Virus record (IMG/VR): IMGVR_UViG_3300036781_000418
Span: 278,592 to 342,591 of that record
Length of the DNA: 64,000 nucleotides
Reading direction: 5' to 3' (one strand)
Position 1 is the stretch's first letter. Each line of letters begins with the position of its first letter. Both the position numbers and the translations under genes were made by a program. Below the pieces are notes generated by a model, which worked only from the letters and a program-made list of their open reading frames with translations, was not told where the DNA came from and searched no databases. Shown piece after piece: positions 29,861-49,346 of the stretch.

Positions 29861-30862
29861 ATGTCAACCGGCTACCTCAATCAAGACTTCAAGCAGTGTC
29901 TCATCGACCTCAACACGCATGGCATCGTCAGCGCCCCACGTGGATCCGAGACGAAGGAGCTGCTGAACTACAACATCACCCTGCGCGATCCACGCAACCG
30001 CCTGATCACGATGCGCGATCGCAACACCAAGCTGCCCTACCTGCTGGGCGAGTTCATCTGGTACCTCGGTGGCTCGAATGAACCGACCGACATCCTGGCG
30101 TACTCGAAGTTCTGGGGACAGCTCACCAACGTCGGTGGACCTGAAGGTTACGCGGACGGCACGATCAACTCCAACTATGGCTACCGCTTCTTCGGCCACG
30201 ACAAGAACGCGGCGGTCGACCGCGGCTACGACGAGAAGACGTCGCAGTGGTACACGGTGGTCGACATCCTGTCCAAGGACAAGGACTCCCGTCAGGCCAT
30301 CATGAACGTGCACTTGCCCGCTGACCGCTGGGCTGGCAACAAGGACGTGCCGTGCACCCTGTCCCTGCAGTTCTTCATTCGTGACAACGCCCTGCACATG
30401 ATCGTGAACATGCGGTCGAACGACGTCATCTTGGGCTTCACCAACGACGTCTTCCAGTTCACCATGCTGCAGGAAGCGATGCTGCTCCAGCTCCAGCGCT
30501 TCTACCCGGACATTGAACTCGGCTTCTACTACCACAACGCCGGCTCGATGCACATCTACGACCGTCACTACGCCATGATGGACAAGATCATGGCCGACGA
30601 GACCGTGATCGACGTGTCCATGGTTCCGATGGACAAGTTCAACGACCAGATCATTCTGGGTCTGTACACGGTTGAGCAGGTCTGGCGTCAAGCTGGCATG
30701 AATCCCGACTTCGATCCGGCTACCGTCGGTGCTTGGGCCCTCCTGACGCCGTACTGGCAGAACCTCTTCCGCATGTGTTTCCTTGAAGACGCCGAGGCCT
30801 TCAGCTACATCTTCGGTGACACCCATGACGATCACGTTCACGGTGAGCACTGTGAGCACTGA
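29861..30862 (+). CDS. Thymidylate-synthase homologue, dCMP hydroxymethylase/hydroxylase-like (T4 gp42-type)
   Basis: INSNYG, DSRQA, KDVPCT, MRSNDVILGFTND (Asp at the cytosine-specificity position), GSMHIY. Confidence 0.8.
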   Translation: MSTGYLNQDFKQCLIDLNTHGIVSAPRGSETKELLNYNITLRDPRNRLITMRDRNTKLPYLLGEFIWYLGGSNEPTDILAYSKFWGQLTNVGGPEGYADGTINSNYGYRFFGHDKNAAVDRGYDEKTSQWYTVVDILSKDKDSRQAIMNVHLPADRWAGNKDVPCTLSLQFFIRDNALHMIVNMRSNDVILGFTNDVFQFTMLQEAMLLQLQRFYPDIELGFYYHNAGSMHIYDRHYAMMDKIMADETVIDVSMVPMDKFNDQIILGLYTVEQVWRQAGMNPDFDPATVGAWALLTPYWQNLFRMCFLEDAEAFSYIFGDTHDDHVHGEHCEH

Positions 30863-31058
30863 ACGCTACCCAGTCGGCACGCTGCTGCGATTTTTAGAGA
30901 ACAGCAGCGTGCCTGAAGATCCAATCTACGGGTACGTCGTGGAGAACTACAAGTTGCCAGGCGACGTCTGCGTCTGTTGGGAGACCAACATGATGTCGTC
31001 CTACGACGAAGAGTGGCTCGACGGACACACGGTCATCAACACAACTGGTAAACGCTAA
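30852..31058 (+). CDS. Hypothetical protein
   Basis: Short ORF overlapping the previous stop. Confidence 0.4.
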   Translation: MSTERYPVGTLLRFLENSSVPEDPIYGYVVENYKLPGDVCVCWETNMMSSYDEEWLDGHTVINTTGKR

Positions 31059-31060
31059 CC

Positions 31061-31303
31061 ATGTTCGCATACGCAATCCTCGCAATCCTCGTGCTGATGG
31101 GCACGACCTTCGGTACTCGGTACCTCAACTTCTCGTCTGACCACACCATCGGCGCGATGGTGCTGTCAGCCGGTTTGGCGGTTGGCCTGCTCATCATGGG
31201 TGGTGTCGCCCATGTAGATGAAATTGCCCATGACAGGGTCATCGCCGCCGCACAGTGCGCGACTGGTCCGGTTCCGACACCCGCACCACCAGCGTCCAAG
31301 TGA
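31061..31303 (+). CDS. Small membrane protein
   Basis: Two hydrophobic segments. Confidence 0.5.
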   Translation: MFAYAILAILVLMGTTFGTRYLNFSSDHTIGAMVLSAGLAVGLLIMGGVAHVDEIAHDRVIAAAQCATGPVPTPAPPASK

Positions 31304-31490
31304 AGCACAACCTCGGCGCGCAACCAAGGTCAGTGACCGTCAAGGCGCTGCTGACCTCGTTGATTGAACGACGTGAACCCCAAGAGGTGATCGTCGTTCA
31401 CCACTACATCGATAAGATGGACGTTCTTCAGCTGGAGGTCGAGCGTCGATCAACGACGTTGGGCGTTCACTTTGAAAGGGTTTTCATCAG

Positions 31491-32072
31491 ATGAAATATG
31501 GAATCCAAATTCGGTTTCACGATGGACAAATCGAATACCTGTACAGCAGCCGCTATTTGGGGTTGACGAAGGACATCACCGAGACCGCGCTCTACAACCA
31601 AGAGCAGAGCGCGATCGACGCGGTCAAGCTACTGCGCAAGGACGGGCATGAGCCAGATGATGGGGAGTTTGAAGTCATCGGCGTAGAGTACGCCGTGCAG
31701 AAGACCGTCACGGTTAAGCAGCCTCCACGGAAGACGGGCTACGCAATCATCACCTCATCGGTTGAAAAGCCCGACATTGACGTCTTCTTCAACGGTACCA
31801 AGCGACCTGGCATTCACGACAACCGACTCCACCAGTTCTTCGGAACCATTCATCGCGCCACCACGTTCGAGACTGAGGCCTTGGCTGAGGCGCGTGTTCA
31901 GGTGATCATCGCCGCCGCCGACTTCGCGTTGAACGAGGCTGGTAAACCAGCTTACGACTACGGCGGTTTCCGAAACACCGCGGAAGAACGTGAGCGCTCA
32001 CGACAAGCGTGCATCGCCTACGCCCAACGACTTCGAGACGACTTGAACGCAATCCACGTAGAAAAGCTCTAA
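31491..32072 (+). CDS. Hypothetical protein
   Basis: 193 aa, coupled to its neighbours. Confidence 0.6.
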   Translation: MKYGIQIRFHDGQIEYLYSSRYLGLTKDITETALYNQEQSAIDAVKLLRKDGHEPDDGEFEVIGVEYAVQKTVTVKQPPRKTGYAIITSSVEKPDIDVFFNGTKRPGIHDNRLHQFFGTIHRATTFETEALAEARVQVIIAAADFALNEAGKPAYDYGGFRNTAEERERSRQACIAYAQRLRDDLNAIHVEKL

Positions 32073-33826
32073 TGAAATACGAATCGCAGATCCTCGAGGC
32101 CTATACGTACCTCGGCTTCGCACCACGGCCAGGTCAGGTTGAGAACATCAACCTGATCCTCACGACCTTCCTTGACGACGGTATCAAGACGATCACACTG
32201 TCCGCGCCAACCGGCACGGGCAAGTCACTGATCGGGGCGGTGACCGCCGAGGTACTTCACCGCATCAAGCACCCAGACGTTGAAGCGGGCGCGAGCTTTC
32301 TGCTGTCGCCGACGAACCTGCTGTCCGAGCAGTACCACACCACCTTCCAACAGGGGCGTGATCCAATGGACACTCGGTTCAGGATGTTAAAGGGCGCGAA
32401 CAACTACGAGTGTTCAGCCCTGTCCACGGATGAGGAACAGCAGAACGCCGAGGTCTGCGCCAACATCATGTTCAAGAAGCAGGGCATGGAGCCGATCATC
32501 CAAGAGCACTGCAACAAGTGCCTCTTCATGTTCCACAAGAGCATGCGTGACCGCGCCCGCCACCTGATCACGAACTACTCCATGTTCTTCGTTGATCGGA
32601 TGTACACGAAGCGGATGGCCCCGCGCACCTTGACCGTCTTTGACGAGGCCCACCTCATCAACGACCTGTTCACCGAGCACAACGCCATCTACTTCTCAGA
32701 CTCACGCCTCGTGAAGATGCAGAAGGAAGTGTCGGAAGGCCTGACTCTTGGCCACACCTCGATCTTCAAGGACCTGAAGCAGATTCGACTGGACATGCTG
32801 GATGGCAAGATCAACGAAGGCACGTACATCCAGTACCTGACTCAGCTTGCGGAAATCTACGCCGACGTGTCGGAGCAGGCGGCCGCCGAGATGGAGCGTA
32901 CCATCCGCTCACCGAAGCGCTACATGCAGCTGTCCGACCTGCAGCGGAAGTACTTCGGCCTGGGCTGTAAGATCGGCGACCTGCTGCTCTACCAGTACCC
33001 ACACGCTTTCGAGCACAAGGTCCGTGATCCGAAGTTCAAGGGCAGTGAGGACGAGGTCTCCGTGAAGCCGATCTTCGTCGGCGACATGTTCAAGATCCTT
33101 GACTACTCGGAGCACAACCTCTTGATGTCGGCGACGTTCTCCAAGACGTACGCCACCCGCACCCTGACGTTGGGCGACTCGCACCGCCACATTCGCCTTG
33201 AACCCACGTTCCCACGTGAGAACAAGAAGGTCCTGTTCTTCAAGACGCAGACCTTGAACTACAACACGATGCAGCAGCCTGAGACCTTGAAGAAGCTCCA
33301 AGCTTCGGCCTACGAGATCGTCAAGCACCACACCGACCTTGGTGAACGCGGCATCCTGCTGGCACCGTCGTTCATCGTGGCCAACGGGGTGGCTGAAGCG
33401 CTCCGTGGCATGAAGGTCGGCACCCGCATCTTCGAGCAGGTGCGTGGTGAGAAGCTGGGCACCGTCGTGGCGCGCTTCAAGGAGTTCAACGAAGGTCCCG
33501 CCCTGTTGGTGACGCCGTCTGGCTTCGAAGGTCTTGATCTGGCCGGTGACCTTAGCCGCTACCAGATCATCTTGAAGACCCCGTACGCCTCGCTTGGTGA
33601 AGCACGCATCCGCCACATCGCCAACGGCTACCCCGACATCTACCGCCTCATGGCGACGATGAAGGTGGTCCAAGGTGCGGGTCGGTCAGTGCGTGGTCCA
33701 GACGACTACGCCATCACGTACATCATGGACGCGGCGGCCCAAGCCCTTTGGACTAGCTCGGACATGGAGTGGGCCAACGAGTTCTCAACGCGCTTCAGCA
33801 GCCTGCTGGTTGATCCCAATGAATGA
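32072..33826 (+). CDS. DinG/Rad3-like SF2 helicase
   Basis: PRPGQ, APTGTGKS, KGANNYEC plus Cys cluster, DEAH, MSAT, EGLD, QGAGRSVR. Confidence 0.9.
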   Translation: MKYESQILEAYTYLGFAPRPGQVENINLILTTFLDDGIKTITLSAPTGTGKSLIGAVTAEVLHRIKHPDVEAGASFLLSPTNLLSEQYHTTFQQGRDPMDTRFRMLKGANNYECSALSTDEEQQNAEVCANIMFKKQGMEPIIQEHCNKCLFMFHKSMRDRARHLITNYSMFFVDRMYTKRMAPRTLTVFDEAHLINDLFTEHNAIYFSDSRLVKMQKEVSEGLTLGHTSIFKDLKQIRLDMLDGKINEGTYIQYLTQLAEIYADVSEQAAAEMERTIRSPKRYMQLSDLQRKYFGLGCKIGDLLLYQYPHAFEHKVRDPKFKGSEDEVSVKPIFVGDMFKILDYSEHNLLMSATFSKTYATRTLTLGDSHRHIRLEPTFPRENKKVLFFKTQTLNYNTMQQPETLKKLQASAYEIVKHHTDLGERGILLAPSFIVANGVAEALRGMKVGTRIFEQVRGEKLGTVVARFKEFNEGPALLVTPSGFEGLDLAGDLSRYQIILKTPYASLGEARIRHIANGYPDIYRLMATMKVVQGAGRSVRGPDDYAITYIMDAAAQALWTSSDMEWANEFSTRFSSLLVDPNE

Positions 33827-34943
33827 GCTTGAAGAGGATGAAGAAGAGCCCCGTGTCGGTAGAATATCAAAGATGTCAAGACACTTTTCAACACGCGACC
33901 TTACTATCTTGGGTGGAGCCACAATGAGAGACGGAACGTACATCACCGACGACTACGAAGAGTCGAGGAAGATGGCCTTCATCACGAGTCTTGTCGATCA
34001 AGGCCACACGGTGCTGAACGATCGGCGCAAGTGCCAGAAGCCTGACATGCCGCTGATGGCCTTCGTCAAGCTCGTGCAGGCCTTGGCCGCCAAGGTGAAC
34101 AGCTCGACGGCCCAGGTCATCATGTACGGGCCTGGCTACTCGGACAACGCGAACACCGGTACGGCCACGGTGTTCAGCAAGGACATCTACATCAACGTGC
34201 AGTTCGAGCCGGACATTGCCACGATCGACGTCTTCTGCTGGGGCAACTACATTCCCATCATCGGCAAGGCGATCGAGGAGATCACCATGCCACTCGGTCC
34301 ACGCATTCACTGGGCGTACGGCAAGCACGGTGAGACCATGACTCAGCAGCTGAACATGGTTCCCCTCGTCATCGGTGCGTACCCATGGATGAAGCAGACG
34401 TACGAGGACTACGTCGACGCGTTCATGAAGTCGAGCGCGAACATCCTCATCCTGCTTGGCCCAGCCGGAACCGGCAAGACGTCGTTCATCCGCAACATGA
34501 TCGCCCGCACGAAGTCCCAAGCGCTGCTCACCTACGACCAAGAGCTGATTCGCGACGAGCGCTTCTTCGTGAACTTCATGGAGGGTCAGTCCACCTTCAT
34601 GGTGGCCGAGGACTGTGACACCATGCTGAAGTCCCGTGAGGACGGCAACACGATGATGCACCGGTTCCTGAACATCGCCGACGGTCTGGTCTCGAGCTCG
34701 AAGAAGAAGCTGATCTTCAGCACGAACCTGCCAACGGTACGTGACATCGACACGGCGCTGATCCGTCCTGGTCGCTGCTTCGACGTGATGGAGTTCCGTC
34801 CACTGACCCGTGTTGAGGCGACCGCCGTGACGACGCGCTACAACCTTGACCTGGCAGACGGCAACTCGTTCACGTTGGCCGAGCTCTTCAACGGCGAACA
34901 ACCAAGCGCGACCACCGTGAACAGGTCGATGGGTTTCACCTGA
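33819..34943 (+). CDS. AAA+ ATPase
   Basis: GPAGTGKT, VAEDCD, FLNIADG, STN, DTALIRPGRCFD. Confidence 0.85.
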   Translation: MNELEEDEEEPRVGRISKMSRHFSTRDLTILGGATMRDGTYITDDYEESRKMAFITSLVDQGHTVLNDRRKCQKPDMPLMAFVKLVQALAAKVNSSTAQVIMYGPGYSDNANTGTATVFSKDIYINVQFEPDIATIDVFCWGNYIPIIGKAIEEITMPLGPRIHWAYGKHGETMTQQLNMVPLVIGAYPWMKQTYEDYVDAFMKSSANILILLGPAGTGKTSFIRNMIARTKSQALLTYDQELIRDERFFVNFMEGQSTFMVAEDCDTMLKSREDGNTMMHRFLNIADGLVSSSKKKLIFSTNLPTVRDIDTALIRPGRCFDVMEFRPLTRVEATAVTTRYNLDLADGNSFTLAELFNGEQPSATTVNRSMGFT

Positions 34944-35867: not shown

Positions 35868-36485
35868 ATGACCGACTACCCTCAACCCTCCGTCTTCCTG
35901 ATTGAAGGTCTCGACCGCCTTGGTAAGTCCACGCTCGTCGAGAACATCATCGACAAGCTGGGCTACTACCAGCGCCTCCACTTCTCCAAACCGAAGATGG
36001 TCGAGCGCTACGCCAATGCGGAAGCGGACGTTGAGTTGGCGGTCAAGTACGGCGTGTCCAGTGAGAACGCCGCGCTGTTCCACTACCAGCAGGCGTGCTT
36101 CCGCAACTTGTTCATCATGGCCCACAGCTACGGTCGCTTCATCTGCGACCGCGCCCACCTCGGCGAGGCGGTCTACTCGAACCTCTACCGCGGCTACGAC
36201 GGCAACTACGTCTTCGACCTTGAAGAGAACCTCGCGGCCAACGAGCTCGCCCGAGTGCGGCTCATTCTGTTGGTCGAGAACTTCACGTGCTCCAAGCACT
36301 TCGTCGACGACGGCCACAGCCTTGGCCCAGAGTCGGCGCGCGCCAAGGAGCAGGACCTGTTCATGCACGCGTTCAACCGCTCCATCATCCGCGACAAGCG
36401 CGTGGTGAGCGTGACGGACATCTACACGGGCCAGTTCCGTGATCCACAGGACATCCTCGAAGAGGTTCTGGCTCATGCTTTCTGA
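35868..36485 (+). CDS. Thymidylate/dNMP kinase
   Basis: IEGLDRLGKST P-loop; ICDRAHLGEAVYS..YRG. Confidence 0.85.
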   Translation: MTDYPQPSVFLIEGLDRLGKSTLVENIIDKLGYYQRLHFSKPKMVERYANAEADVELAVKYGVSSENAALFHYQQACFRNLFIMAHSYGRFICDRAHLGEAVYSNLYRGYDGNYVFDLEENLAANELARVRLILLVENFTCSKHFVDDGHSLGPESARAKEQDLFMHAFNRSIIRDKRVVSVTDIYTGQFRDPQDILEEVLAHAF

Positions 36486-37111: not shown

Positions 37112-38272
37112 ATGAACATCGGTGTTATCAAGCTTGGCGCCCGCATCACCTGGGAAACCGACGCCGCCGTCGGACCAGGCGAGGCCATTTCCATCTGCAA
37201 GGCCCTCCAACGCGGTGGCGCCAACGTCAGCGTCCTCACGAAGATTCTGCCCAAGGACACGCTTCACCCGTCGCTGACGTGGAAGAACATCCTCGAGGCG
37301 ACGACCGCTGACTCGCTCGAGCACCTTGATCACCTGATCGTCGTCAACGGCAACGTGAACTTCTTCGGCGGGGCCGAGGACGAAGCCCAGATCGCGAACT
37401 ACACGGTGATCAACAACTTCCCAGGCAAGGTCACCTACGTGATGTGCGACCCTGAGCTGCCACTTATGCAGATTTGGGGCAACGTGTCCGGCAAGGAGTG
37501 GGGCTCGAAGTACGCCGAGGCCGACATTAACATCACCCGCCCTGACATCAGCGTCCTGTCGCAGCCGTTTGCCACCGACAAGGTGCGTGAACGCTGGAGC
37601 AAGAAGAAGGGTGCGGCACCGATCGGCAACTTCTTCCACTTCCCAATGGAGCGTTTTCCACTGCTGAACGAGTGGCTGCCACCCAACCCAACTCCACAGG
37701 TTGATCTCATGTACGGCGGCACGACTCGGGGCGGTCGCAGAATTCCTAACCTGTTGAAGTGGTACGTTGACTTGCCTGAGGACATCAGCGTTAACGTCTT
37801 TGGCAAGATCGATCGCGATGACTTTACCAAGCATCCAAAGTACGTACCACAGGTGATGCAGTTGGATCAGCCAGCTGATCATCGCTGGCCAGTGTTTACT
37901 GGCATGGTGAAGTACTGTAGCGTCCTGCCAAAGATGAACACGGCCTTGGCCCACCTGGTTACTGGCGACCCGTCCTACGAGGTGTTGGACATCATTCCAC
38001 AGCGCGCCATGGAGTGCATTGCCGCCGGCAACGTTGTCTTCGTGGACGCGAACATGGACTCCTCACGTCGCATCTACCCAACAGGACTTGCACGCGAGTT
38101 CCTGTACGTGACCAACCAAGCTGAGCTGGTTGAGAGGTTGCGGCAGGTAAAGTCCAACGACGGACTGCGCCAACAACTCATTGCTTCGCAGGTCGCTGAA
38201 ACTCGCTTTGACGCTGACGAATTTTGTCAGAGTCTGGTTACAACCTTGAAGGCACAACGATGGACACGATAA
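37112..38272 (+). CDS. DNA beta-glucosyltransferase homologue (T4 BGT family glycosyltransferase)
   Basis: Colinear with T4 BGT as recalled: DHLIVVNGNVNFFGG, CDPELP..IW.NV, SQ, FP.E, DLMYGG..RGGRR. Confidence 0.8.
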   Translation: MNIGVIKLGARITWETDAAVGPGEAISICKALQRGGANVSVLTKILPKDTLHPSLTWKNILEATTADSLEHLDHLIVVNGNVNFFGGAEDEAQIANYTVINNFPGKVTYVMCDPELPLMQIWGNVSGKEWGSKYAEADINITRPDISVLSQPFATDKVRERWSKKKGAAPIGNFFHFPMERFPLLNEWLPPNPTPQVDLMYGGTTRGGRRIPNLLKWYVDLPEDISVNVFGKIDRDDFTKHPKYVPQVMQLDQPADHRWPVFTGMVKYCSVLPKMNTALAHLVTGDPSYEVLDIIPQRAMECIAAGNVVFVDANMDSSRRIYPTGLAREFLYVTNQAELVERLRQVKSNDGLRQQLIASQVAETRFDADEFCQSLVTTLKAQRWTR

Positions 38273-38610
38273 GCAGGCTGGTTGACAGACTGACGACCCT
38301 TACGCGGCACCTGGTGGACAATGAAAACTCCACCTTGATCGTTGAGTCTACGCGTGAGAAAAACGCTGAAAACATCGGCCGCGAGTTGCTTGACTGCCGG
38401 CGCGAGCTGTTCGCCGAGCTGAAGAAGTTGCGGGAGAAGGCCAAGCGCTGGGACGCGCTGAAGAAGCATGGGCAGTTGGAGCAGGCGCATCTTGACTACA
38501 GCACCGTTCGCTACTCCATCGAGTTCGACATCAGCAAGGTTGATTTGTCCATGCGTAAAGCGGTCGACCGTCTGATCAAGGAACACGAGACCAAGGAGAG
38601 CACTGAATAA
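38260..38610 (+). CDS. Hypothetical protein
   Basis: Coiled-coil ORF in operon. Confidence 0.5.
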   Translation: MDTISRLVDRLTTLTRHLVDNENSTLIVESTREKNAENIGRELLDCRRELFAELKKLREKAKRWDALKKHGQLEQAHLDYSTVRYSIEFDISKVDLSMRKAVDRLIKEHETKESTE

Positions 38611-39113
38611 TGCCGTCCCTTAACGCCTTTAGAAACTTGGACAAGATCGTCCGTCTGGCGATCATCAACCGATGCGTCGCCCGTAAGTACGCCTTTTTGA
38701 AGACCAACTCCCTCGTGCGATCAGACTCCACCCAGTTCCTCGAGTTCGTGAAAGGTAAGGTGCTTCTCATCGGCGACCGGCCGGCGCCCTCAGCCCCCGA
38801 CGACCCTGAGTTCCACTACACCCCGTTCGCGGCCCTGTGGAACTCCAGCCTGTGGCTGAACTTGAAGCTCCACGAAGCGGGCGTCGATGAGGCCAACCTA
38901 CGGTGGATCAACTCGGCCGAGAAGAACGGCACGCCCACGAACTATGGCATCATGCTGGGTGAGTTTTCCAAGGTCATCTGCCTTGGTGGCAACGCCGAGA
39001 AGTGGCTGTTGAAGACTGGCTGGGGCAAGGCCTACAGCCGGGTGGACCACCCCGCCTACTGGAAGCGCTTTCATCCGAAGGATGACTACCCGCTGATTGA
39101 GCTCCTTAAATGA
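38610..39113 (+). CDS. Uracil-DNA-glycosylase-superfamily-like protein
   Basis: VLLIGDRP, PF, WIN, VICLGGNA, HPAY motif order. Confidence 0.55.
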   Translation: MPSLNAFRNLDKIVRLAIINRCVARKYAFLKTNSLVRSDSTQFLEFVKGKVLLIGDRPAPSAPDDPEFHYTPFAALWNSSLWLNLKLHEAGVDEANLRWINSAEKNGTPTNYGIMLGEFSKVICLGGNAEKWLLKTGWGKAYSRVDHPAYWKRFHPKDDYPLIELLK

Positions 39114-39436
39114 CGCCCAAGCTCCTCGCTCGTCACATCAAGATCGACAAGTGGGGCACTAAGGCGTACGTGACTGGGGACGGTCGGGTGTTCAAGCGGG
39201 TATTGGGCAGCGCACATGATGTCGTTCAAGTTGGTAAACCGTGCTGGTTGATCCACCACCTTGGCCTACACCACGGTGAAGTCTGGCGCTACGAGCTCTA
39301 TGAGGTGATCATTGATTGCTGGGACGCCGAGTTGCCGGAGTTACCACGCACATGGTACCGCAAAGGCCGGTTCTTGGTGTACGAAGACCCAAACTTCAGG
39401 TTACCAGTACTCGCCAACGTCATACAATCAAGGTGA
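39110..39436 (+). CDS. Hypothetical protein
   Basis: Coupled ORF. Confidence 0.45.
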   Translation: MTPKLLARHIKIDKWGTKAYVTGDGRVFKRVLGSAHDVVQVGKPCWLIHHLGLHHGEVWRYELYEVIIDCWDAELPELPRTWYRKGRFLVYEDPNFRLPVLANVIQSR

Positions 39437-39453
39437 ATCATACAGGAGACACC

Positions 39454-40101
39454 GTGAAGTTCACGCGCCCCACCATCGTCCTCATCACCGCCCCGACCTG
39501 TTCGGGCAAGACCCACCTGCTTGAACACCTCATAAAGGAGGGCCTGTTTGCACGAGTGGTTGGTACCACGACGCGACCACGGCGCCAAGGTGAGGTGGAC
39601 GGCGAGACCTACCAGTTCGTCTCCAAAGACGAGTTTAGTTACATGGCTGACCATGGCAAGTTCACGCAGACGGTCACGTTCAGCGGCAACTCCTACGGTG
39701 TGACCACGGCGGCGTTGGACAAGGCTGCTGAAACTGGACTGGCGCCCGCCATTATCGTCGAACCAACTGGCATCGGCCAGTACCGCCAATTTGCGTACAG
39801 CAGTGGAATGTGGGACGTTTTCCAGATCTACGTTTCCACTGAGCAGAAAGTCTGCCTGCAGCGGTTGAACCAGCGGACGCTGGCCGACCTTGACAAGGCG
39901 CTCAACGCTGTGGAACGCACCAAGCTCATGGAAGTCCACACCACCCGCACCAAGTCGATTCTGCAGGATGAAGCTGGTTGGCAGGCCAAGTCAACGTGGA
40001 ACGTCATCGCACCTGGAGACGACATTGAAGGCGCCGTGCTGATGATCAAGGCGGGCATTTACCAGCAGAACCGCAGGGTCTTGGACGGAACGCTCGTATG
40101 A
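39454..40101 (+). CDS. Guanylate kinase-like protein
   Basis: APTCSGKT, TTTRPRRQGEVDGETYQFVS, GNSYG; GTG start with AGGAG. Confidence 0.85.
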   Translation: MKFTRPTIVLITAPTCSGKTHLLEHLIKEGLFARVVGTTTRPRRQGEVDGETYQFVSKDEFSYMADHGKFTQTVTFSGNSYGVTTAALDKAAETGLAPAIIVEPTGIGQYRQFAYSSGMWDVFQIYVSTEQKVCLQRLNQRTLADLDKALNAVERTKLMEVHTTRTKSILQDEAGWQAKSTWNVIAPGDDIEGAVLMIKAGIYQQNRRVLDGTLV

Positions 40102-40589
40102 TCTACATGCTGAAGCCGCCCACGGCGATCAACCTCATGCGGATCAACCGTCGCACGGTGTTTCTGGCGGGCTCAATCGAGATGGGTAAGGCCGTCGATT
40201 GGCAGACCGTCGTTACCCGTGCACTCCTGGACTCTGGCATTGATGAGGACGTGCTGGTGCTAAACCCGCGTCGTGATGACTGGGACTCGACGTGGACGCA
40301 GGCTGAGTCCAACCCGCAGTTCAATGAGCAGGTCACGTGGGAGCTCAACGGCCTCGACGCAAGTCAGGCCGTGTTCTTCTACTTTCAGCCAGGCACGGTC
40401 TCGCCGATCAGCCTGCTTGAGCTCGGACTAATGCTCAACTCAGAACACGATCCGGCCATGTTCATCGTCTGTCCTGAAGGCTACGCTCGAAAGGGCAACG
40501 TGGACATCACCGCGCACCGAACCGGACACGCGGTCTACGGCTCGCTCGAGGGCGGTATCGCCGCGCTCGTCTCCTGGCTCAAGGACTAA
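40098..40589 (+). CDS. Nucleoside 2-deoxyribosyltransferase-like protein
   Basis: VFLAGSIEMG..DWQ, LNPRRDDWD, QVTWEL, SPISLLELGL, RKGNV. Confidence 0.85.
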   Translation: MIYMLKPPTAINLMRINRRTVFLAGSIEMGKAVDWQTVVTRALLDSGIDEDVLVLNPRRDDWDSTWTQAESNPQFNEQVTWELNGLDASQAVFFYFQPGTVSPISLLELGLMLNSEHDPAMFIVCPEGYARKGNVDITAHRTGHAVYGSLEGGIAALVSWLKD

Positions 40590-42124: not shown

Positions 42125-42126
42125 GT

Positions 42127-42190: not shown

Positions 42191-42196
42191 AGCACC

Positions 42197-44362: not shown

Positions 44363-44556
44363 GCACCATGCCAGCACGTGAGCTGAAGAAGTGGGCGCAG
44401 CAGGAAGTCGCTGAGGCCCTCGTCGAATGGCTCAAGGAACGGATCAAGGACCCGTCCTTCGACTTCGACGATCGTCAAGCCTTGAAGATCCAAGCAATCC
44501 GAGTCGCCGCGTACATGGGCCAGCCGGCGACCGTTGAAAAGTTGGCCAGAGTTTAG
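44359..44556 (+). CDS. Hypothetical protein
   Basis: GGAG RBS, coupled. Confidence 0.5.
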   Translation: MSTMPARELKKWAQQEVAEALVEWLKERIKDPSFDFDDRQALKIQAIRVAAYMGQPATVEKLARV

Positions 44557-44609
44557 TTTTCCATTAACCCTTAACGACGCGAAAGCACATGTCATAGGAG
44601 CACACCATC

Positions 44610-44981
44610 ATGTCAACCCACAAAACCTACCACCTCCCCGTCAAGTTCTCGTGCGAGACCGACGGCAGCGGATTCTGGACACGCAAGACCCGCGTGGTAC
44701 CCATCGCCGAACTGGAGCTGATCGCACACAGCACGGACGACCATGCGCGGTACGGTGAGGTACGGGTTCACTTTGATGAGGGTGCCTGGAACACGAACAC
44801 GGACGGTCTGATCTTCACGGACCGCAACTTCATCAACGAGCTCAAGCTCGAGCTGAAGAAGCTCGGAATGCCGGCCGCCGAGTACCTCTCCTACGGGGAC
44901 AAGTCCGAGCAAGGACTTACGTACGTGCAGCTCGACTGCGACACGGCGTTCATCGCCGAGTTCAAGAAGCTGCTCAAGTGA
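44610..44981 (+). CDS. Conserved phage hypothetical protein
   Basis: AGGAG RBS; TDGSGFW...DGLIFTD...SEQG. Confidence 0.6.
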   Translation: MSTHKTYHLPVKFSCETDGSGFWTRKTRVVPIAELELIAHSTDDHARYGEVRVHFDEGAWNTNTDGLIFTDRNFINELKLELKKLGMPAAEYLSYGDKSEQGLTYVQLDCDTAFIAEFKKLLK

Positions 44982-45084
44982 TACGGCGACACGGTTGAGG
45001 CCGAGAGCATTCTCCGTGCCGAAGCTGATGAGCCATACAGCGACACGAGCCGGGACGCACCAGCGCCCTCTCGTGTCGCTCCGT
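44981..45084. repeat. Cluster of GCGACACG(AG) motif copies (direct and inverted)
   Basis: ATACGGCGACACG at 44981, ATACAGCGACACGAG at 45035, inverted copy at ~45070. Also at 27421, 27499-27520 and 56287. Confidence 0.5.
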
Positions 45085-45170
45085 TTTGAACCCGCACTAT
45101 CTGCCAGCTAATGCCTCCGGCCGAGTGCGAACTGTGGTACATTAACCTGTCTTTAACCTGAGGAGACCTT

Positions 45171-45731
45171 ATGTCCGACCGTAGCCTTCCTTCGTCCAAC
45201 ATGAACTACCGACTCTACTCGTTCGCGATGGGTCACTACATCAAGGAGATTCAGTGGGGGATTCAGACTGCCCATGGTGCCACTCAGATGATTGGTCGCG
45301 CGTTGGCGGCCCACATTGAAAACCCGGTTGACACCGAAGTTTTGGCCAAGTGTCTGCAGCTCGCGGATTGGTCAGTGCCAGGTCGTTCGAATGGCGCGAC
45401 CGTGATCGTGTGCGACGTGATCAACTACCAAGGTCTCCATGACGTCATCGACAACATGAAGCCGTTGGCTGATTTGCTCATGATGCCGTTTGAAATCTTC
45501 AAGGAGGACTTCGCCTCGCTCGGTGGCCTCATCACGAACGTGGCGGTCCTCGTGCCTGACGCACTCTACGACGTGATCGATGTCATCGATACGCTCAACC
45601 CTGGCTGCGACGCCTACGCGCTCAACCCTGAAGTCGCCAAGCGACTGGGTGAACCGGGCGTCACCTACTCGGTTGGCACGCCCGAGCACGCCATGATCAA
45701 GATGTTGAAGTCCTACAAACTCGTCAAGTAA
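45171..45731 (+). CDS. Phage protein, possible PTH2 (peptidyl-tRNA hydrolase 2)-like fold
   Basis: GIQTAH helix, TVIVC strand, FKED..LGGLITNVAVLVP. Confidence 0.4.
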   Translation: MSDRSLPSSNMNYRLYSFAMGHYIKEIQWGIQTAHGATQMIGRALAAHIENPVDTEVLAKCLQLADWSVPGRSNGATVIVCDVINYQGLHDVIDNMKPLADLLMMPFEIFKEDFASLGGLITNVAVLVPDALYDVIDVIDTLNPGCDAYALNPEVAKRLGEPGVTYSVGTPEHAMIKMLKSYKLVK

Positions 45732-45741
45732 GGAGACGATC

Positions 45742-46227
45742 ATGACACGGCCAAGCAATGAAAAGGTCCTCACGCGGATCTTCGCCGCCCTCAAGCAACA
45801 ACAGGAGGCCAACGGCTTTGGGGTGATGTTGGTCTTGGGCGATACTGAGCAGGAGTCGTTCGCCTACACGGTCGGTCTTTACGACGCGTTGGGGTATGAG
45901 TTCATCATGACGGGGGCCGCGACGATGGCCGCCAAGACGGTGTTCAGCTTGATCTGGACAACGGTCAGCAAATCAGATCGTCGTCCAGTCGTCGGCGGTG
46001 CTCGTGACGACATCATGAACCACCCCCTGAACGTGAACCTTCGCTTCTTCGCCGTGCCTGAGGAGTTGGCCTACGAGAACTACACCTTCCAAGTCGAGAA
46101 CTGGCACGATAAACGGGTTCCAATCGTGCAGATCATGGTGCCGGACGACAATGACCGGTTCTTCGACGACGCAGGCTGCAACATTCCGCCTGAGCTTCAC
46201 GTTCGACTGTTCCCTACGTTGAACTGA
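45742..46227 (+). CDS. DUF4262-like protein
   Basis: FAYTVGL...EFIMTG...VQIMVPDDNDRF. Confidence 0.65.
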   Translation: MTRPSNEKVLTRIFAALKQQQEANGFGVMLVLGDTEQESFAYTVGLYDALGYEFIMTGAATMAAKTVFSLIWTTVSKSDRRPVVGGARDDIMNHPLNVNLRFFAVPEELAYENYTFQVENWHDKRVPIVQIMVPDDNDRFFDDAGCNIPPELHVRLFPTLN

Positions 46228-46353
46228 GGCGACACCGGTGCGGCCGAGGGCACACGTTCGTCCTTCGGCATATAGCACCTGATCACGTAGTTCAGGACGC
46301 CTCTGGCCCTTAGTGTTGGTATGATTTGAGTACCATTCACTAAGGGCCTTTTC

Positions 46354-46818
46354 ATGTCCGGATACAACAACCCGATCCCCGTCGTCGTGGCGCTCATCCC
46401 CACGATGACACAACTCATTCCCCTCAACGGCCAACCCAACTTGAAGTTCGGCTACGTGGCCCAAGTCCGCGCGATCGAGCCGGGCCTCGGTGGCGTCTGT
46501 CTGCCCTCGGGCTACATCAACGAGGGTGAGACCGCCGAGATCGCCTGCTCCCGTGAAGTCAAGGAAGAGATGGGGCTTGACATTCCGTCGGAAGAGTGGT
46601 CGACCATCTGCACGCGCATCACCCCGCAGAACCGCCTGCTGATCTTCTTGACGTACGTCGGCGAGACGTACATGCAGATGGACTTCAAGGACCTGCCGCC
46701 GCACGTGCCCAACGACGAGGTCTCGGCCCGCGTGATGGTCGACGAGACCGACGAGCTGGTCTTCCCGCTGCACCAAGAGGTCGTGCGTCTGATCTTGAAC
46801 GCCCTCCACGGCAATTAA
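46354..46818 (+). CDS. NUDIX hydrolase
   Basis: YNNPIPV; LPSGYINEGETAEIACSREVKEEMG. Confidence 0.85.
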   Translation: MSGYNNPIPVVVALIPTMTQLIPLNGQPNLKFGYVAQVRAIEPGLGGVCLPSGYINEGETAEIACSREVKEEMGLDIPSEEWSTICTRITPQNRLLIFLTYVGETYMQMDFKDLPPHVPNDEVSARVMVDETDELVFPLHQEVVRLILNALHGN

Positions 46819-46913
46819 GGTGACCCACGCTGCGGTTCCGGTGAACCGCAGTTTTGTGTGCGCAGGGTTACTGGTCGGTTACAATGGTGGCATCACCGTT
46901 TGATGGAGACCCC

Positions 46914-47729
46914 ATGTCCGAGAAAAGCCAACTAGTCGCCCGCCAGTACTCCATAATGCTGGCCAACGACAACATCACCAAGCAGATCGCCGCCCTGCAG
47001 AACCTCTACAAGGTGTTGGTGGATCCGGTCTACACGGAGATCGTTGACCTCCTTACCAAGGTCGCGCAGACCCAGTACCTGCGCCGCATCATCTTGACGG
47101 GCGTCGGCAAGAACGCCAACATCGCCACCAAGATCGCGGAGACGATGGCCAGCCTCGGCATCCCCGCCTTCTACTTGAACACCGCCCACACGGGGCACGG
47201 TGACTACGGCTTCATCGGCCACAACGACGTGATCGTTCACATCTCCCGTTCGGGCACAACCCGTGAGATGCTCGAGACGGCGGCCCACACCAAGCTAATC
47301 CGCCCAAACGTCAAACAGGTCCTCATCCACTGCAAGCCCACGAAGCCGGTCTGCGAGCACATGGATCTTGAGCTGTGCCTTGGCAAGGTCGAGGAGGGTG
47401 ACGAGCACGGCCTCGCACCGACGACCTCAACCACCGCCTTGCTCTGCGCGTTGGACTGCATCTCAATTCAAGTGTCCCACAACGTCGGCTTCGAGCGGAT
47501 GGACTTCTTGAAGCTGCACCCGGACGGCGCGCTTGGCGACATGCTAAAGGCCGAGACGATGCAGACGCCGAGTAAGTTCAACTCGGACTTGTCGCTTGGC
47601 GAGCTGCCAATGAAGAACCAGGTGGAGTACCTTCAAGCCGTCGACGACAACGTGGAGGCCGACGCGCTCATCATGGCCGTCGGTCGAGCCGCCCTGGACC
47701 TCCCACAACCTGGTATGGAGCACGTGTAA
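46914..47729 (+). CDS. KdsD/GutQ-like arabinose-5-phosphate isomerase (SIS domain)
   Basis: TGVGKN..IATKIAETMASLGIP, HGDYG, ISRSGTTRE, LAPTTST, F.KLHPDGALG. Confidence 0.88.
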   Translation: MSEKSQLVARQYSIMLANDNITKQIAALQNLYKVLVDPVYTEIVDLLTKVAQTQYLRRIILTGVGKNANIATKIAETMASLGIPAFYLNTAHTGHGDYGFIGHNDVIVHISRSGTTREMLETAAHTKLIRPNVKQVLIHCKPTKPVCEHMDLELCLGKVEEGDEHGLAPTTSTTALLCALDCISIQVSHNVGFERMDFLKLHPDGALGDMLKAETMQTPSKFNSDLSLGELPMKNQVEYLQAVDDNVEADALIMAVGRAALDLPQPGMEHV

Positions 47730-47732
47730 ACC

Positions 47733-49346
47733 ATGCACCTCGTAATTCTCGCGTCTGGGCTTGGTTCACGCCTCGCGCCGCTGACCAACCACATTCCAAA
47801 GTTCCTCGTCAACATTGGCAAGGAGACGGGACTCACTGAGCAGATCCGGTACTGGAAGCAGTACTACCCCGAGTCCATCACGCTGGTCGTGCACTCGGCC
47901 TACGAGGAACTCGTGAGGTCCTACTATCAGCTGTACTTCAGCAAGGACGAGCAGCTCGAGGTGCTGGCTGAAAACGGCGAAGACTTCGTGCCGACTCCAC
48001 TGCACATCAAGACGGTCGACGAGGCGCTGGGTTCCGCCCACGCCATCATGAACTCGTGTGAGCACCTTGACGGCGTGGACAACGTGATGATCAGCTGGTG
48101 CGACATCCTGCCAGGTGAGCAGATCAACTACGACAACCTGCAGACGTTCACGGGCGATCCAACGGTCTTCACCAACTACGACTACCCCAACCGCTATGGC
48201 TTGGTTCCAAGTGGGCACGCGTTCGCGCCTCAGCCTGTGACGCACGGTGGCGGTGTGGTTGGGTTGTACTTCGTGCCGCACTTCAAGCTGGTGCCCTTCA
48301 CCGACGGCCAAGACTTCGTCGACGTGATCACCAAGTACTCCACCACTGGCACCGTTGGAGAACAGCGGTTGAGCAGCGTCGTGGACTGGGGCGACAAGCC
48401 AAAGCTGGAGCACACCCGCTCCACGGCTGACAAGGCCCGCTCGTTCAACGCCGTTGAGTTCCACGGCGACCTCGTGAAGAAGTACGCGTTGAACGAGCAA
48501 GGCCGTCCACTGATCAAGCGTGAGATCGCCTGGTACGACGCGCTGACTCAGCTCAACTCGAAGGTCAACCGCCCCAAGACATGGCTGGCCGACGACAGCT
48601 TCGTCATGTCGAAGGTCAAGCACGGCGTGATGATCTGGGAACACTGGCCGATGCTGGACGAGATCGGTCGGGCCGAGGTGCTGACGCAGGTCCTTGACCA
48701 ACTTGACCTGCTCCACGCCTGCACCGTGCAGGCGACCAAGGAGGTCGTGCAGCGTGACGTGAAGGTCGAGGCGTTCGACAAGCTGCGCGCCCGGTACGAC
48801 GAGATCAAAGAGGTGGTAGACTCCTTTGGTAAGGTCGACCGTGTGAACGGCTACCACATCGGTGACGTCGATCCGATTGAGCTGATCACATGGACCGCCA
48901 CCGAGTTGATGAAGCACTACGAGGACGTCGACACGTACTCCATCATCCACGGTGACCTGCAGTTCTCGAACAGCATGATCAGCCCAGCCAGTCATGAGGT
49001 GACGTTCATCGACCCACGCGGCTACTTCGGCAAGACGGAGCTCTACGGCCTGCCTGACTACGACAAGGCCAAGCTGCTCTACGCGCTGTCGGGCTACGAC
49101 CAGTTCAACTACAGCCATGACTTCCACCTGAAGCGACTGGGCAATGGTGAGATTTGGTTTGACCTGCCACGACCTGATCTGCGCGGCTGTGAGCAGATCA
49201 TCAAGGAGCGGTTCGACAACGTGCAAACGCTCTGGCTGGCGATCATCTGGCAGGGGTTGGCGCAGTACATCAAGAACGACCCCGTGAAGTCCGTGGCCGC
49301 TCACTATCATGGACTTTCTCTGATGCACAAACTCCGTGTCGGTTGA
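47733..49346 (+). CDS. Sugar nucleotidyltransferase fused to APH/choline-kinase-like phosphotransferase
   Basis: ILASGLGSRLAPLT..PKFL, GSAHAI, WCD, DWGD; C-terminal IIHGDLQFSN, FIDPRGYFG, YDKAKL. Confidence 0.85.
   Translation: MHLVILASGLGSRLAPLTNHIPKFLVNIGKETGLTEQIRYWKQYYPESITLVVHSAYEELVRSYYQLYFSKDEQLEVLAENGEDFVPTPLHIKTVDEALGSAHAIMNSCEHLDGVDNVMISWCDILPGEQINYDNLQTFTGDPTVFTNYDYPNRYGLVPSGHAFAPQPVTHGGGVVGLYFVPHFKLVPFTDGQDFVDVITKYSTTGTVGEQRLSSVVDWGDKPKLEHTRSTADKARSFNAVEFHGDLVKKYALNEQGRPLIKREIAWYDALTQLNSKVNRPKTWLADDSFVMSKVKHGVMIWEHWPMLDEIGRAEVLTQVLDQLDLLHACTVQATKEVVQRDVKVEAFDKLRARYDEIKEVVDSFGKVDRVNGYHIGDVDPIELITWTATELMKHYEDVDTYSIIHGDLQFSNSMISPASHEVTFIDPRGYFGKTELYGLPDYDKAKLLYALSGYDQFNYSHDFHLKRLGNGEIWFDLPRPDLRGCEQIIKERFDNVQTLWLAIIWQGLAQYIKNDPVKSVAAHYHGLSLMHKLRVG

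What the first reader, a model, noticed from the sequence alone, without database searches (positions are those of the whole stretch)
29861..49346. Dispersed cytosine hypermodification kit pairing a T4 BGT homologue with an arabinose-type donor pathway
Seen: a second TS homologue with GFTND (29861), in contrast to GLPFN in the canonical TS at 60501. Also a dNMP kinase (35868), a BGT-like glycosyltransferase (37112), a KdsD-like isomerase (46914), an NTP-transferase/kinase fusion (47733) and a HAD phosphatase (54486). Known: Asp at this site gives dCMP specificity as in T4 gp42. T4 BGT uses host UDP-glucose and needs no donor pathway, whereas RB69-like phages with arabinosylated cytosine encode an arabinose-5-P isomerase and an NTP transferase. 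Inference: a BGT-fold enzyme may transfer a phage-made pentose, or two sugar modifications coexist.
Basis: partly seen in the sequence, partly recalled or inferred. Interest (0 to 1): 0.68.

Follow-up and report, generated by a model that had tools for sequence, protein, structure and literature searches.

The report
Hydroxymethylcytosine sugar kit with arabinose pathway
A soil jumbo phage combines the T4-style genes for making and sugar-coating hydroxymethylcytosine with the arabinose-donor genes so far known only from RB69-like phages, which use a different base, so its DNA probably carries a sugar-modified cytosine that has not yet been described.

Summary
The window is the last 64 kb of a complete 342.6-kb soil phage genome, distantly related to Ralstonia phage RsoM2USA.

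- **Second TS homologue.** It has the T4 gp42 signature: Cys, L143D, N177D, and Asp169, Gly173 and the folate Trp kept. It lacks the D169N mark of the flavin 5-hydroxy-dCMP synthases now known to act in RB69. I predict 5hm-dCMP.
- **BGT homologue.** It keeps Glu22, Asp100 and the UDP-binding Arg and Glu residues.
- **Donor genes.** The SIS isomerase is about 52% identical, and the NTP-transferase/kinase fusion about 35% identical over its full length, to the RB69/HY126 API and AfhE enzymes that make UDP-arabinose.
- **Missing RB69-type parts.** I found no AfhF phosphatase, U32-like protein, RB69-type arabinosyltransferases or gp56 dCTPase.
- **HAD at 54486.** It is weak and not conserved, so it is probably not part of the kit.

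Six related contigs carry both modules. RsoM2USA has only TS, kinase and BGT. Some fragments have only API-AfhE in the syntenic block. A second GT4-like glycosyltransferase lies outside the window. Which enzyme uses the arabinose is therefore open. I favour direct use by the BGT homologue only slightly, at about 0.35.

The parts
29861..30862 (+). Second thymidylate-synthase homologue, predicted folate-dependent dCMP hydroxymethylase (5hm-dCMP synthase). It has Cys165, Asp at Cys-3 (L143D), MRSND with Asp188 (Ec D169 kept), Gly192 (Ec G173 kept) and Asp196 (N177D).
   Evidence: PF00303 E 5e-21. Alignments and residue table. The tree places it outside the strongly supported 5ho-type clade. Homologues with the same motif occur in G001, G002, G004, G005 and G006.
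35868..36485 (+). Thymidylate-kinase-like dNMP kinase, the likely 5hm-dCMP kinase.
   Evidence: PF02223 27.8 bits, phrog_761. Homologues lie in G001 beside BGT and in RsoM2USA as gp6, between the TS homologue and BGT. Analogous Tmk-like kinases sit in the RB69, DLP3 and RL38J1 clusters (PMC13326640).
37112..38272 (+). T4 beta-glucosyltransferase-family (GT-B) DNA glycosyltransferase homologue. It keeps Glu24 (T4 E22), Asp113 (T4 D100), YGGTTRGGRR (T4 R191, R195), GDPSY (T4 G257, D258, Y261) and PQRAME (T4 R269, E272).
   Evidence: PF09198 E 1.4e-22, phrog_7922 E 6e-48, PDB 1bgt E 6e-34. Family alignment. Motif coordinates.
38610..39113 (+). Conserved neighbour of BGT with a uracil-DNA-glycosylase-superfamily-like fold. 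Its role is unknown. In some relatives it lies directly upstream of Gmk-API-AfhE.
   Evidence: ESM Atlas structure and feature hits to UDG clusters. It is conserved in G001, RsoM2USA and L084/L085/L105.
39316..40101 (+). Guanylate-kinase-like nucleotide kinase.
   Evidence: PF00625 E 5e-18, TIGR03263 E 4e-20. It is present in the API-AfhE-bearing relatives and absent from RsoM2USA.
40098..40589 (+). Nucleoside 2-deoxyribosyltransferase-like protein (DNPH1/MilB-type superfamily). This is a nucleotide-pool enzyme of unknown specificity.
   Evidence: PF15891 E 4e-30. It is conserved in G001 and RsoM2USA.
46354..46818 (+). NUDIX hydrolase immediately upstream of the isomerase. It is an optional accessory, present in 5 of 11 related contigs.
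   Evidence: PF00293 E 6.5e-7. Distribution.
46914..47729 (+). SIS-domain D-arabinose-5-phosphate isomerase (API; RB69 gp55 / DLP3 gp83 type). It converts Ru5P to Ara5P.
   Evidence: phrog_5670 E 4e-72, KdsD NF008141 E 5e-29, about 52% identity to Mosigvirus API. The start is supported by a GGAG.
47733..49346 (+). AfhE-type bifunctional enzyme. The N-terminal domain is a sugar-1-P nucleotidylyltransferase (GLGSRL...K motif). The C-terminal domain is an APH/choline-kinase-like kinase (IHGDLQFSN, IDPRGYFG). The predicted product is UDP-D-arabinofuranose.
   Evidence: phrog_4098 E 2e-114. It is 34-36% identical over 99% of its length to the HY126/RB69-type enzyme. Motifs are invariant in alignment A2. 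It is the only NTP_transferase in the genome.
54486..55073 (+). It is probably not a conserved member.
   Evidence: Only weak matches: BT0820 HAD E 5e-5, 2obb E 0.0097, phrog_1238 E 0.0038. Motif I is DLHDT. It is absent from G001 and G005, and present in LR756500.1, which lacks AfhE.
60501..61448 (+). Canonical thymidylate synthase ThyA (Leu143, Asp169, Asn177). It serves as the internal contrast to the second homologue.
   Evidence: PF00303 E 1e-88. Residue table.

Best explanation
The phage replaces cytosine by 5-hydroxymethylcytosine and then decorates it with sugar, in four steps.

1. The TS homologue at 29861 acts as a folate-dependent dCMP hydroxymethylase and makes 5hm-dCMP. This step is inferred from active-site residues.
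2. The Tmk-like kinase at 35868, with host NDP kinase, raises it to the triphosphate, and the phage polymerase incorporates it. This step is inferred by analogy with T4 and with the RB69/DLP3 assays.
3. In parallel, the isomerase at 46914 diverts ribulose-5-P to arabinose-5-P. The AfhE-type fusion at 47733 phosphorylates C1 and, after removal of the 5-phosphate by an unidentified phosphatase, makes UDP-D-arabinofuranose. This step is inferred from homology to the characterised HY126/RB69 enzymes.
4. After replication, the BGT-family enzyme at 37112 flips out 5hmC and transfers the sugar to its hydroxyl.

My committed reading is that in this clade the BGT homologue has taken the phage-made UDP-arabinose as donor. 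That would give arabinosyl-5hmC, a hybrid of the T4 and RB69 chemistries. The GT4-like second glycosyltransferase (G000:C1:237597-238667, minus strand, outside the window) may extend the sugar chain.
For: **Base maker**
- The TS homologue carries the full T4 gp42 signature: E60, W82, S94, Y96, D145, C148, D171, G175 and D179 equivalents.
- It lacks the D169N, G173V and Trp-loss signature of verified 5ho-dCMP synthases (criteria from PMC13326640 and PMC6400193).
- The 5ho-type enzymes form a clade with 99/98 support that excludes it.

**Transferase**
- The BGT homologue keeps the catalytic and UDP-binding residues.

**Donor module**
- API is 52% and AfhE 35% identical to the RB69/HY126 enzymes, and both AfhE domains keep their motifs.

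**Co-occurrence**
- All six relatives long enough to judge (G000, G001, G002, G004, G005, G006) carry the 5hm-type TS, BGT and API-AfhE together, in a fixed order inside the nucleotide-metabolism block.
- The BGT homologue is the nearest glycosyltransferase to API-AfhE, 7-9 kb away. No GT-sized conserved ORF lies between or just after them.
- No homologue of the RB69/HY126 arabinosyltransferases was found in G000, G001 or RsoM2USA.
- The second GT carries a frameshift in G001, where API-AfhE is intact.
Against: - No sequence feature shows a donor switch. No alignment column has all five BGTs from genomes without AfhE agreeing while the AfhE-bearing clade differs.
- BGT divergence from RsoM2USA (39%) equals the genome average of 38%.
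- T4 BGT is a hexopyranosyl transferase, whereas the donor here would be a pentofuranose.
- RsoM2USA and LR756500.1 have TS plus BGT without AfhE.
- Contigs G007-G010 keep API-AfhE but lack TS, kinase and BGT at the syntenic slots. The donor module therefore may have a BGT-independent consumer.
- A second, clade-wide GT-B enzyme exists.
- The AfhF phosphatase step has no conserved candidate.
- Nothing here is biochemical.
Confidence: 0.35

Rival explanations
1. Two sugars coexist. The BGT homologue still uses host UDP-glucose to make beta-glucosyl-5hmC, as in T4. The phage-made UDP-arabinose is consumed by another transferase, either the GT4-like enzyme at G000:C1:237597-238667 or an unrecognised one. 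That enzyme adds arabinose onto the glucose or onto a share of the 5hmC residues.
For: - All BGT family-invariant residues are unchanged.
- RsoM2USA and LR756500.1 run TS plus BGT without any arabinose pathway.
- A confident GT-B/GT4-like second transferase exists, with Atlas pTM 0.88 and TM about 0.9 to viral GT clusters. The known DNA arabinosyltransferases of RB69 and DLP3 are also GT4-like (PMC13326640).
- API-AfhE occurs without BGT at the syntenic place in G007-G010.
Against: - The second GT is also present in RsoM2USA, which has no arabinose pathway.
- It is frameshifted in G001, which has the pathway.
- It has no detectable sequence similarity to RB69 gp3.
- It lies about 88 kb from API-AfhE.
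Confidence: 0.28
2. The arabinose module is not for DNA. API-AfhE supplies a glycosyltransferase that modifies virion proteins or the host envelope, and the DNA carries only glucosyl-5hmC or plain 5hmC.
For: - The TS/kinase/BGT and API-AfhE modules are separable in relatives. State A has only the first and state C only the second in the syntenic block.
- This jumbo-phage lineage carries other sugar-nucleotide genes. RsoM2USA has a GDP-mannose dehydratase, a GT9-like gene and a GlmU-like gene (PMC8504454).
- No AfhF, U32-like protein or RB69-type arabinosyltransferase accompanies API-AfhE here.
Against: - In every characterised phage that encodes the API-AfhE pair, it feeds DNA arabinosylation (PMC13326640).
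- In this clade the pair sits inside the DNA-replication and nucleotide-metabolism block, among kinases, helicases and topoisomerase II, not among structural genes.
Confidence: 0.2
3. This is an RB69-like system after all. The TS homologue hydroxylates dCMP to 5-hydroxy-dCMP, and arabinose is attached directly to 5hoC.
For: The API-AfhE pair is otherwise known only alongside 5ho-dCMP synthases. The D169N rule is empirical and rests on a limited set of tested enzymes.
Against: - Asp169, Gly173, the folate-contact Trp and Ser94 are all kept, as in T4 gp42 and ThyA. All four 5ho-type sequences compared differ at these sites.
- The protein lies outside the 5ho clade.
- BGT-family enzymes act on a hydroxymethyl group.
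Confidence: 0.05

Closest known systems
T4 / T-even glucosyl-5hmC system (gp42 dCMP hydroxymethylase, gp1 kinase, beta-glucosyltransferase)
   Same: - A TS homologue with the same active-site signature.
- A BGT-family GT-B enzyme with the same catalytic and UDP-binding residues.
- A separate canonical ThyA and a dCMP deaminase in the genome.
   Different: - Identity is only 29-30%.
- The kinase is Tmk-like, not gp1-like.
- I found no gp56-type dCTPase and no alpha-GT.
- T4 needs no donor pathway, whereas this clade adds API-AfhE.
- The host genome is a 343-kb jumbo phage, not a member of the Straboviridae.
RB69 / DLP3 / HY126 arabinosyl-5-hydroxycytosine system (Afh pathway; PMC13326640)
   Same: An API of the same PHROG (52% identity) directly followed by an AfhE-type nucleotidyltransferase-kinase fusion (35% identity, full length). 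A Tmk-like kinase lies near the TS homologue.
   Different: - The base maker is the 5hm (folate) type, not the D169N flavin 5ho type.
- There is no AfhF phosphatase, U32-like protein or GT4-like Aat1/Aat2 homologue.
- The transferase next to the kit is BGT-family.
- The genes are spread over about 20 kb rather than packed into one tight cluster.
Ralstonia jumbo phage RsoM2USA and uncultured phage LR756500.1
   Same: These are the closest sequenced relatives. About 138 ORFs are shared with RsoM2USA at about 38% identity. They have the same TS homologue, Tmk-like kinase and BGT set, and the same 5hm-type signature.
   Different: They have no API-AfhE. RsoM2USA instead has a CofD-like and a CofC/MobA-like gene in the slot between BGT and topoisomerase II. 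No DNA modification has been reported for it.

Membership tests
dCMP hydroxymethylase (T4 gp42-type 5hm-dCMP synthase, TS superfamily) | Catalytic Cys (Ec C146 / T4 C148) and Glu (Ec E58 / T4 E60) | tested here: met
   Cys165 and Glu64 are invariant in alignments.
dCMP hydroxymethylase (T4 gp42-type 5hm-dCMP synthase, TS superfamily) | Asp at Ec N177 (T4 D179), giving cytosine specificity | tested here: met
   GFTND has Asp196. Criterion from PMC13326640 and PMC6400193.
dCMP hydroxymethylase (T4 gp42-type 5hm-dCMP synthase, TS superfamily) | Acidic residue at Ec L143 (T4 D145), admitting water | tested here: met
   K-D-V-P-C has Asp at Cys-3, as in T4 S-D-F-M-C.
dCMP hydroxymethylase (T4 gp42-type 5hm-dCMP synthase, TS superfamily) | Folate-type pocket kept: Ec D169, G173, W80; T4 S94, Y96 | tested here: met
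   All are kept in the window protein and in five clade relatives.
dCMP hydroxymethylase (T4 gp42-type 5hm-dCMP synthase, TS superfamily) | Product is 5hm-dCMP | not testable with these tools
   This needs an enzyme assay or LC-MS.
5-hydroxy-dCMP synthase (RB69 gp48 / DLP3 gp80 type) | Asn at Ec D169 (diagnostic D169N) | tested here: not met
   The window has MRSND. HY126, DLP1, Atu_ph04 and PTm1 have MRS(Q/N)N.
5-hydroxy-dCMP synthase (RB69 gp48 / DLP3 gp80 type) | Groups with verified 5ho enzymes in a tree | tested here: not met
   The 5ho-signature sequences form a clade with 99/98 support that excludes the window protein (12 sequences only).
T4 beta-glucosyltransferase family (Pfam PF09198; GT-B) | Family HMM over its cut-off and full-length homology to the solved enzyme | tested here: met
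   PF09198 scores 80.6 bits against a cut-off of 27. PDB 1bgt gives E 6e-34 over T4 residues 56-327. tblastn covers 93%.
T4 beta-glucosyltransferase family (Pfam PF09198; GT-B) | Catalytic base Asp100 (and Glu22); UDP contacts Arg191, Arg195, Arg269, Glu272 | tested here: met
   All are conserved in the alignment. D100 as catalytic base is cited in 10.1101/2023.12.21.572611. The UDP contacts come from my own knowledge of the Morera-lab structures.
T4 beta-glucosyltransferase family (Pfam PF09198; GT-B) | Donor is UDP-glucose | not testable with these tools
   No interpretable pocket difference was seen. The glucose-contact residues were not retrievable from the paper library.
Phage UDP-arabinose (Afh) pathway of RB69/HY126/DLP3 | SIS arabinose-5-P isomerase | tested here: met
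   phrog_5670 E 4e-72, and 52% identity to Mosigvirus API.
Phage UDP-arabinose (Afh) pathway of RB69/HY126/DLP3 | Bifunctional AfhE (nucleotidyltransferase plus APH-like kinase) adjacent to the isomerase | tested here: met
   Full-length match and conserved motifs. The gene starts 4 nt after the isomerase stop.
Phage UDP-arabinose (Afh) pathway of RB69/HY126/DLP3 | AfhF HAD phosphatase (PDB 9iqw / 1xpj type) | tested here: not met
   No phmmer or tblastn hit appeared in G000, G001 or RsoM2USA. The HAD-like 54486 matches the AfhF PHROG only at E 0.0038 and is not conserved.
Phage UDP-arabinose (Afh) pathway of RB69/HY126/DLP3 | GT4-like DNA arabinosyltransferases (RB69 gp46:47, gp3) and U32-like protein in the cluster | tested here: not met
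   There are no hits at E<=1 and no Peptidase_U32. An unrelated GT4-like GT exists elsewhere in the genome.

The most novel reading that the evidence does not exclude
A GT63 (T4 BGT-family) enzyme in this soil jumbo-phage clade has switched donor from UDP-glucose to phage-made UDP-D-arabinofuranose. The virion DNA would then carry genuine arabinosyl-5-hydroxymethylcytosine. That base was once claimed for RB69 and has since been reassigned, so it is currently known from no virus.
Probability: 0.33. Interest if true: 0.8.

Novelty: new variant of a known kind. Interest (0 to 1): 0.64.

Why it matters
Phage cytosine hypermodifications are now sorted into two chemistries. T-even phages use 5hmC with host UDP-glucose. 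RB69, DLP3 and RL38J1 use 5hoC, in the first two with phage-made UDP-arabinose.

This clade mixes the base maker and transferase of the first with the donor module of the second. That predicts a new nucleobase adduct. It also shows that the donor module moves between phage families independently of the base maker and the transferase.

The prediction is directly testable with synthetic genes in the published E. coli in vivo assay, without needing to isolate the phage. It bears on several practical questions:
- which Type IV restriction systems and DNA glycosylases such phages escape;
- how well the D169N rule predicts modifications from metagenomes;
- whether new DNA glycosyltransferases are available for 5hmC-labelling chemistry.

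Tried and rejected
- **Megablast.** A search of 8.4 kb against phage records found nothing.
- **Pfam GT models.** PF00534, PF00535, PF13692 and PF11440 across the genomes are too insensitive. PF13692, the one model also run on the positive control HY126, found none of its known arabinosyltransferases. The absence of further GTs therefore cannot be claimed.
- **MazG and dUTPase models.** PF03819 missed the HY126 dCTPase, and PF00692 found nothing in this clade or in the control. The dCTPase question stays open. RB69 gp56 itself gave no hit.
- **Phyletic screen.** About 60 ORFs are shared by G000 and G001 but absent from RsoM2USA. Fourteen were scanned and none is a recognisable GT or phosphatase.
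- **G001 isomerase ORF.** Its C-terminal extension is a GIY-YIG homing endonuclease, not a phosphatase.
- **BGT specificity positions.** I looked for positions that separate AfhE-bearing from AfhE-lacking genomes. No clean column emerged.
- **Glucose-contact residues of T4 BGT.** A literature search did not retrieve them.
- **HAD-like protein model.** A single-sequence AlphaFold2 model was unusable (pLDDT 35), so I ran no fold search.
- **State C contigs.** The metagenome scan for longer contigs of the API-AfhE-only type found none.
- **NUDIX.** I considered it as the missing phosphatase, as a dCTPase, or as a UDP-glucose hydrolase. It is present in only 5 of 11 related contigs, so it is not an obligatory part.

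Full report
**Setting**

The window is bases 278592-342591 of a 342,591-bp IMG/VR virus record with direct terminal repeats, judged complete. Its GC content is 57%, and GC3 is about 0.78 in real genes. One soil metagenome run holds the sequence. No phage record is similar at the DNA level.

By protein similarity, the nearest named relative is Ralstonia jumbo phage RsoM2USA. About 138 of roughly 420 ORFs are shared at about 38% identity. A closer uncultured relative, G001 (336 kb, 98% complete), shares about 200 ORFs at about 49% identity.

**Observation check**

Details and scores are in the observation field.
It has a GGAG six bases upstream, like the TS gene.
- The HAD-like ORF at 54486 is the only weak assignment.

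**What the literature now says**

Lee et al. (NAR 2026, PMC13326640) show the following:
- RB69 and DLP3 DNA carry mono- and poly-arabinosylated 5-hydroxycytosine, not ara-hmC.
- The TS homologue of those phages is a flavin-binding 5-hydroxy-dCMP synthase.
- An Asn at E. coli ThyA position 169 (D169N) is the diagnostic mark of such enzymes.
- The donor UDP-arabinofuranose is made by an SIS isomerase, the bifunctional AfhE (kinase plus nucleotidyltransferase) and the HAD phosphatase AfhF.
- GT4-like GT-B enzymes install the sugars.

**The base maker**

I aligned the window protein with these sequences:
- T4 gp42 and S16 gp25, the 5hm type;
- HY126, DLP1, Atu_ph04 and PTm1, the D169N type;
- the window's own ThyA.

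The window protein reads K-D-V-P-C ... M-R-S-N-D-V-I-L-G-F-T-N-D. It therefore has:
- L143D and N177D;
- Asp169 and Gly173 kept;
- the folate-contact Trp (T4 W82), Ser94 and Tyr96 kept.

These are exactly the T4 gp42 states. All four D169N-type sequences differ at Asp169, Gly173, Trp82 and Ser94. The roles of these residues in T4 gp42 are described in PMC6400193. A 12-sequence ML tree gives the D169N group 99/98 support as a clade that excludes the window protein. The remainder of the tree is unresolved. I therefore read the enzyme as a folate-dependent dCMP hydroxymethylase.

**The transferase**

The BGT homologue aligns with T4 BGT over the whole GT-B fold. It keeps:
- Glu22 and the catalytic Asp100;
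- the YGG-x-x-R-x-x-x-R loop (Arg191, Arg195);
- G-D-x-x-Y;
- Arg269 and Glu272.

D100 as catalytic base is cited. The UDP contacts are from my own recollection of the published structures. A UDP-sugar donor and a DNA acceptor are therefore likely. The identity of the sugar cannot be read from the sequence.

**The donor module**

The isomerase is about 52% identical to the Mosigvirus and HY126 isomerase. The fusion protein is 34-36% identical over 99% of its length to the HY126/RB69 AfhE type. Both AfhE domains keep their signature motifs: G-L-G-S-R-L...K in the N-terminal domain, and H-G-D-x-x-x-x-N and I-D-P-R-G in the C-terminal domain. The gene order, isomerase then AfhE, is the same as in HY126.

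The rest of the RB69-type cluster is missing. phmmer and tblastn with these queries found nothing in G000, G001 or RsoM2USA at E<=1:
- HY126 AfhF;
- the U32-like protein;
- the first arabinosyltransferase;
- the Tmk-like kinase;
- RB69 gp3;
- RB69 gp56 dCTPase.

Peptidase_U32 and AGT models also find nothing, and AfhE is the only NTP_transferase in the genome. A dCMP deaminase is present at G000:159789-160166.

**Comparative evidence**

A pattern scan of IMG/VR with an AfhE alignment returned 27 loci. phmmer annotation splits most of them into two architectures.
- **Straboviridae.** A tight cluster: API, AfhE, AfhF, sometimes a U32-like gene, 5ho-type TS, GT, kinase, and sometimes a gp3-like gene.
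- **Jumbo-phage clade.** Eleven contigs from eleven metagenomes, GC 46-59%. The order is BGT, UDG-like, Gmk, NDT-like, UvrD-like helicase, PTH2-like, DUF4262, sometimes NUDIX, API, AfhE, then topoisomerase II.

Every contig of this clade that extends far enough upstream also has the BGT homologue (62-68% identity) and a TS homologue with the same MRSND...GFTND signature. These are G001, G002, G004, G005 and G006.

Three states exist in the wider group.
- **State A.** TS, kinase and BGT only: RsoM2USA and LR756500.1.
- **State B.** Both modules: the window and the five relatives above.
- **State C.** API-AfhE in an otherwise syntenic block, with empty slots where TS, kinase and BGT sit in the window: G007-G010. 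In G008 only 126 bp separate the two genes that flank the TS slot. State C contigs are 4-7% fragments, so the missing genes could lie elsewhere. A metagenome scan found no longer examples.

**Who uses the arabinose?**

The BGT homologue is the nearest GT to the donor genes. No GT-sized conserved ORF lies between or just after them.

A second GT exists outside the window at G000:C1:237597-238667 (minus strand). Pfam support is sub-threshold. The ESM Atlas model is confident, and its neighbours are viral and bacterial GT4-like enzymes. This GT has the following distribution:
- It is present in RsoM2USA, which has no arabinose pathway.
- It is present in G005.
- In G001 it carries one frameshift, but is otherwise open.
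- It has no detectable similarity to RB69 gp3.

The BGT alignment shows no column that cleanly separates AfhE-bearing from AfhE-lacking genomes. I therefore give direct use by the BGT homologue 0.35, a two-sugar scheme through another GT 0.28, a non-DNA use 0.20, and an RB69-like 5hoC scheme 0.05.

**The phosphatase gap**

The HAD-like ORF at 54486 has HAD motifs II-IV and the nucleophile Asp, but His at Asp+2. It weakly matches the AfhF PHROG. It occurs only in G000 and in LR756500.1, which lacks AfhE. It is absent from G001 and G005.

The NUDIX gene before the isomerase is present in only 5 of 11 contigs.

The 5-phosphate removal step therefore has no conserved phage candidate. It may fall to a host phosphatase, or the chemistry may differ from HY126.

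**Verdict**

This is a clade-conserved hybrid of the T4 and RB69 chemistries. It is a new variant of a known kind, and the sugar-transfer step is unresolved.

Noticed in passing
window 38610-39113 (+): A 167-aa protein directly after the BGT gene has a uracil-DNA-glycosylase-superfamily-like predicted fold. It is conserved across the clade, and in other viruses it appears fused to a thymidylate-kinase domain (Atlas). In state C contigs it sits directly upstream of Gmk-API-AfhE. A role in the modification pathway is conceivable but untested.
   Followed up: partly
L003:15121-16980 (RsoM2USA gp1) and L057:3044-3793 (-) (RsoM2USA ORF486): In RsoM2USA, the slot between BGT and topoisomerase II, where this clade has API-AfhE, holds a 619-aa CofD-like (2-phospho-L-lactate transferase family) protein and a MobA/CofC-like nucleotidyltransferase. 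This could be a different add-on to the 5hmC kit.
   Followed up: partly
L105/L118-L119 (G008), L084, L086, L085/L120-L121 (G007): These related contigs are syntenic with the window and keep API-AfhE. They lack the TS homologue, Tmk-like kinase and BGT at the corresponding slots, so the donor module can exist apart from the 5hmC module.
   Followed up: partly
G000:C1:193536-194750 (+), outside the window (locus L062): A PurA-like adenylosuccinate-synthetase homologue (PF00709 E 4e-40) lies next to a NAMPT gene (G000:194845-196377). Its best phage hits are PurA-like genes of Rhizobium, Vibrio and Mycobacterium phages, some named PurZ-type by PGAP. No DatZ or MazZ partner was seen among the four flanking ORFs scanned with Pfam, so a 2-aminoadenine pathway is not shown.
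   Followed up: partly
window 61445-61954 (+); 55899-56489 (+); G000:C1:176836-178173 and 144283-145425: An RNA-repair-like set is scattered through the genome. It includes a Tpt1/KptA RNA 2'-phosphotransferase directly after ThyA, a cpYpsA SLOG protein, an RNA ligase, an HD plus AAA_33 kinase (Pnkp-like), and a HAD_SAK_2 protein beside the second GT.
   Followed up: no
window 56000-60000: This is a lower-GC patch (0.53 against 0.57-0.59) with reversed AT skew. It holds five overlapping minus-strand ORFs (56834-59274) inside an otherwise plus-strand block, and it lies between two DnaJ-like genes (55070-55927 and 59351-60178). It may be an inserted island.
   Followed up: no
L014:892-2097 (-), L008:9186-10001, L008:6655-7509, L010:663-1484 (G001): The relative G001 is studded with homing-endonuclease-like genes around the kit. 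A GIY-YIG domain is in frame with the isomerase ORF, and NUMOD3 and MTES_1575-like ORFs lie next to the BGT and kinase genes. This fits the idea that these modification genes are mobile.
   Followed up: partly
window 40098-40589 (+): A nucleoside 2-deoxyribosyltransferase-like protein (PF15891) is conserved in all three full genomes compared. From my own recollection, untested here, the same superfamily includes MilB, the hydroxymethyl-CMP hydrolase that partners the TS homologue MilA. A role in clearing canonical or modified dNMPs is possible.
   Followed up: no
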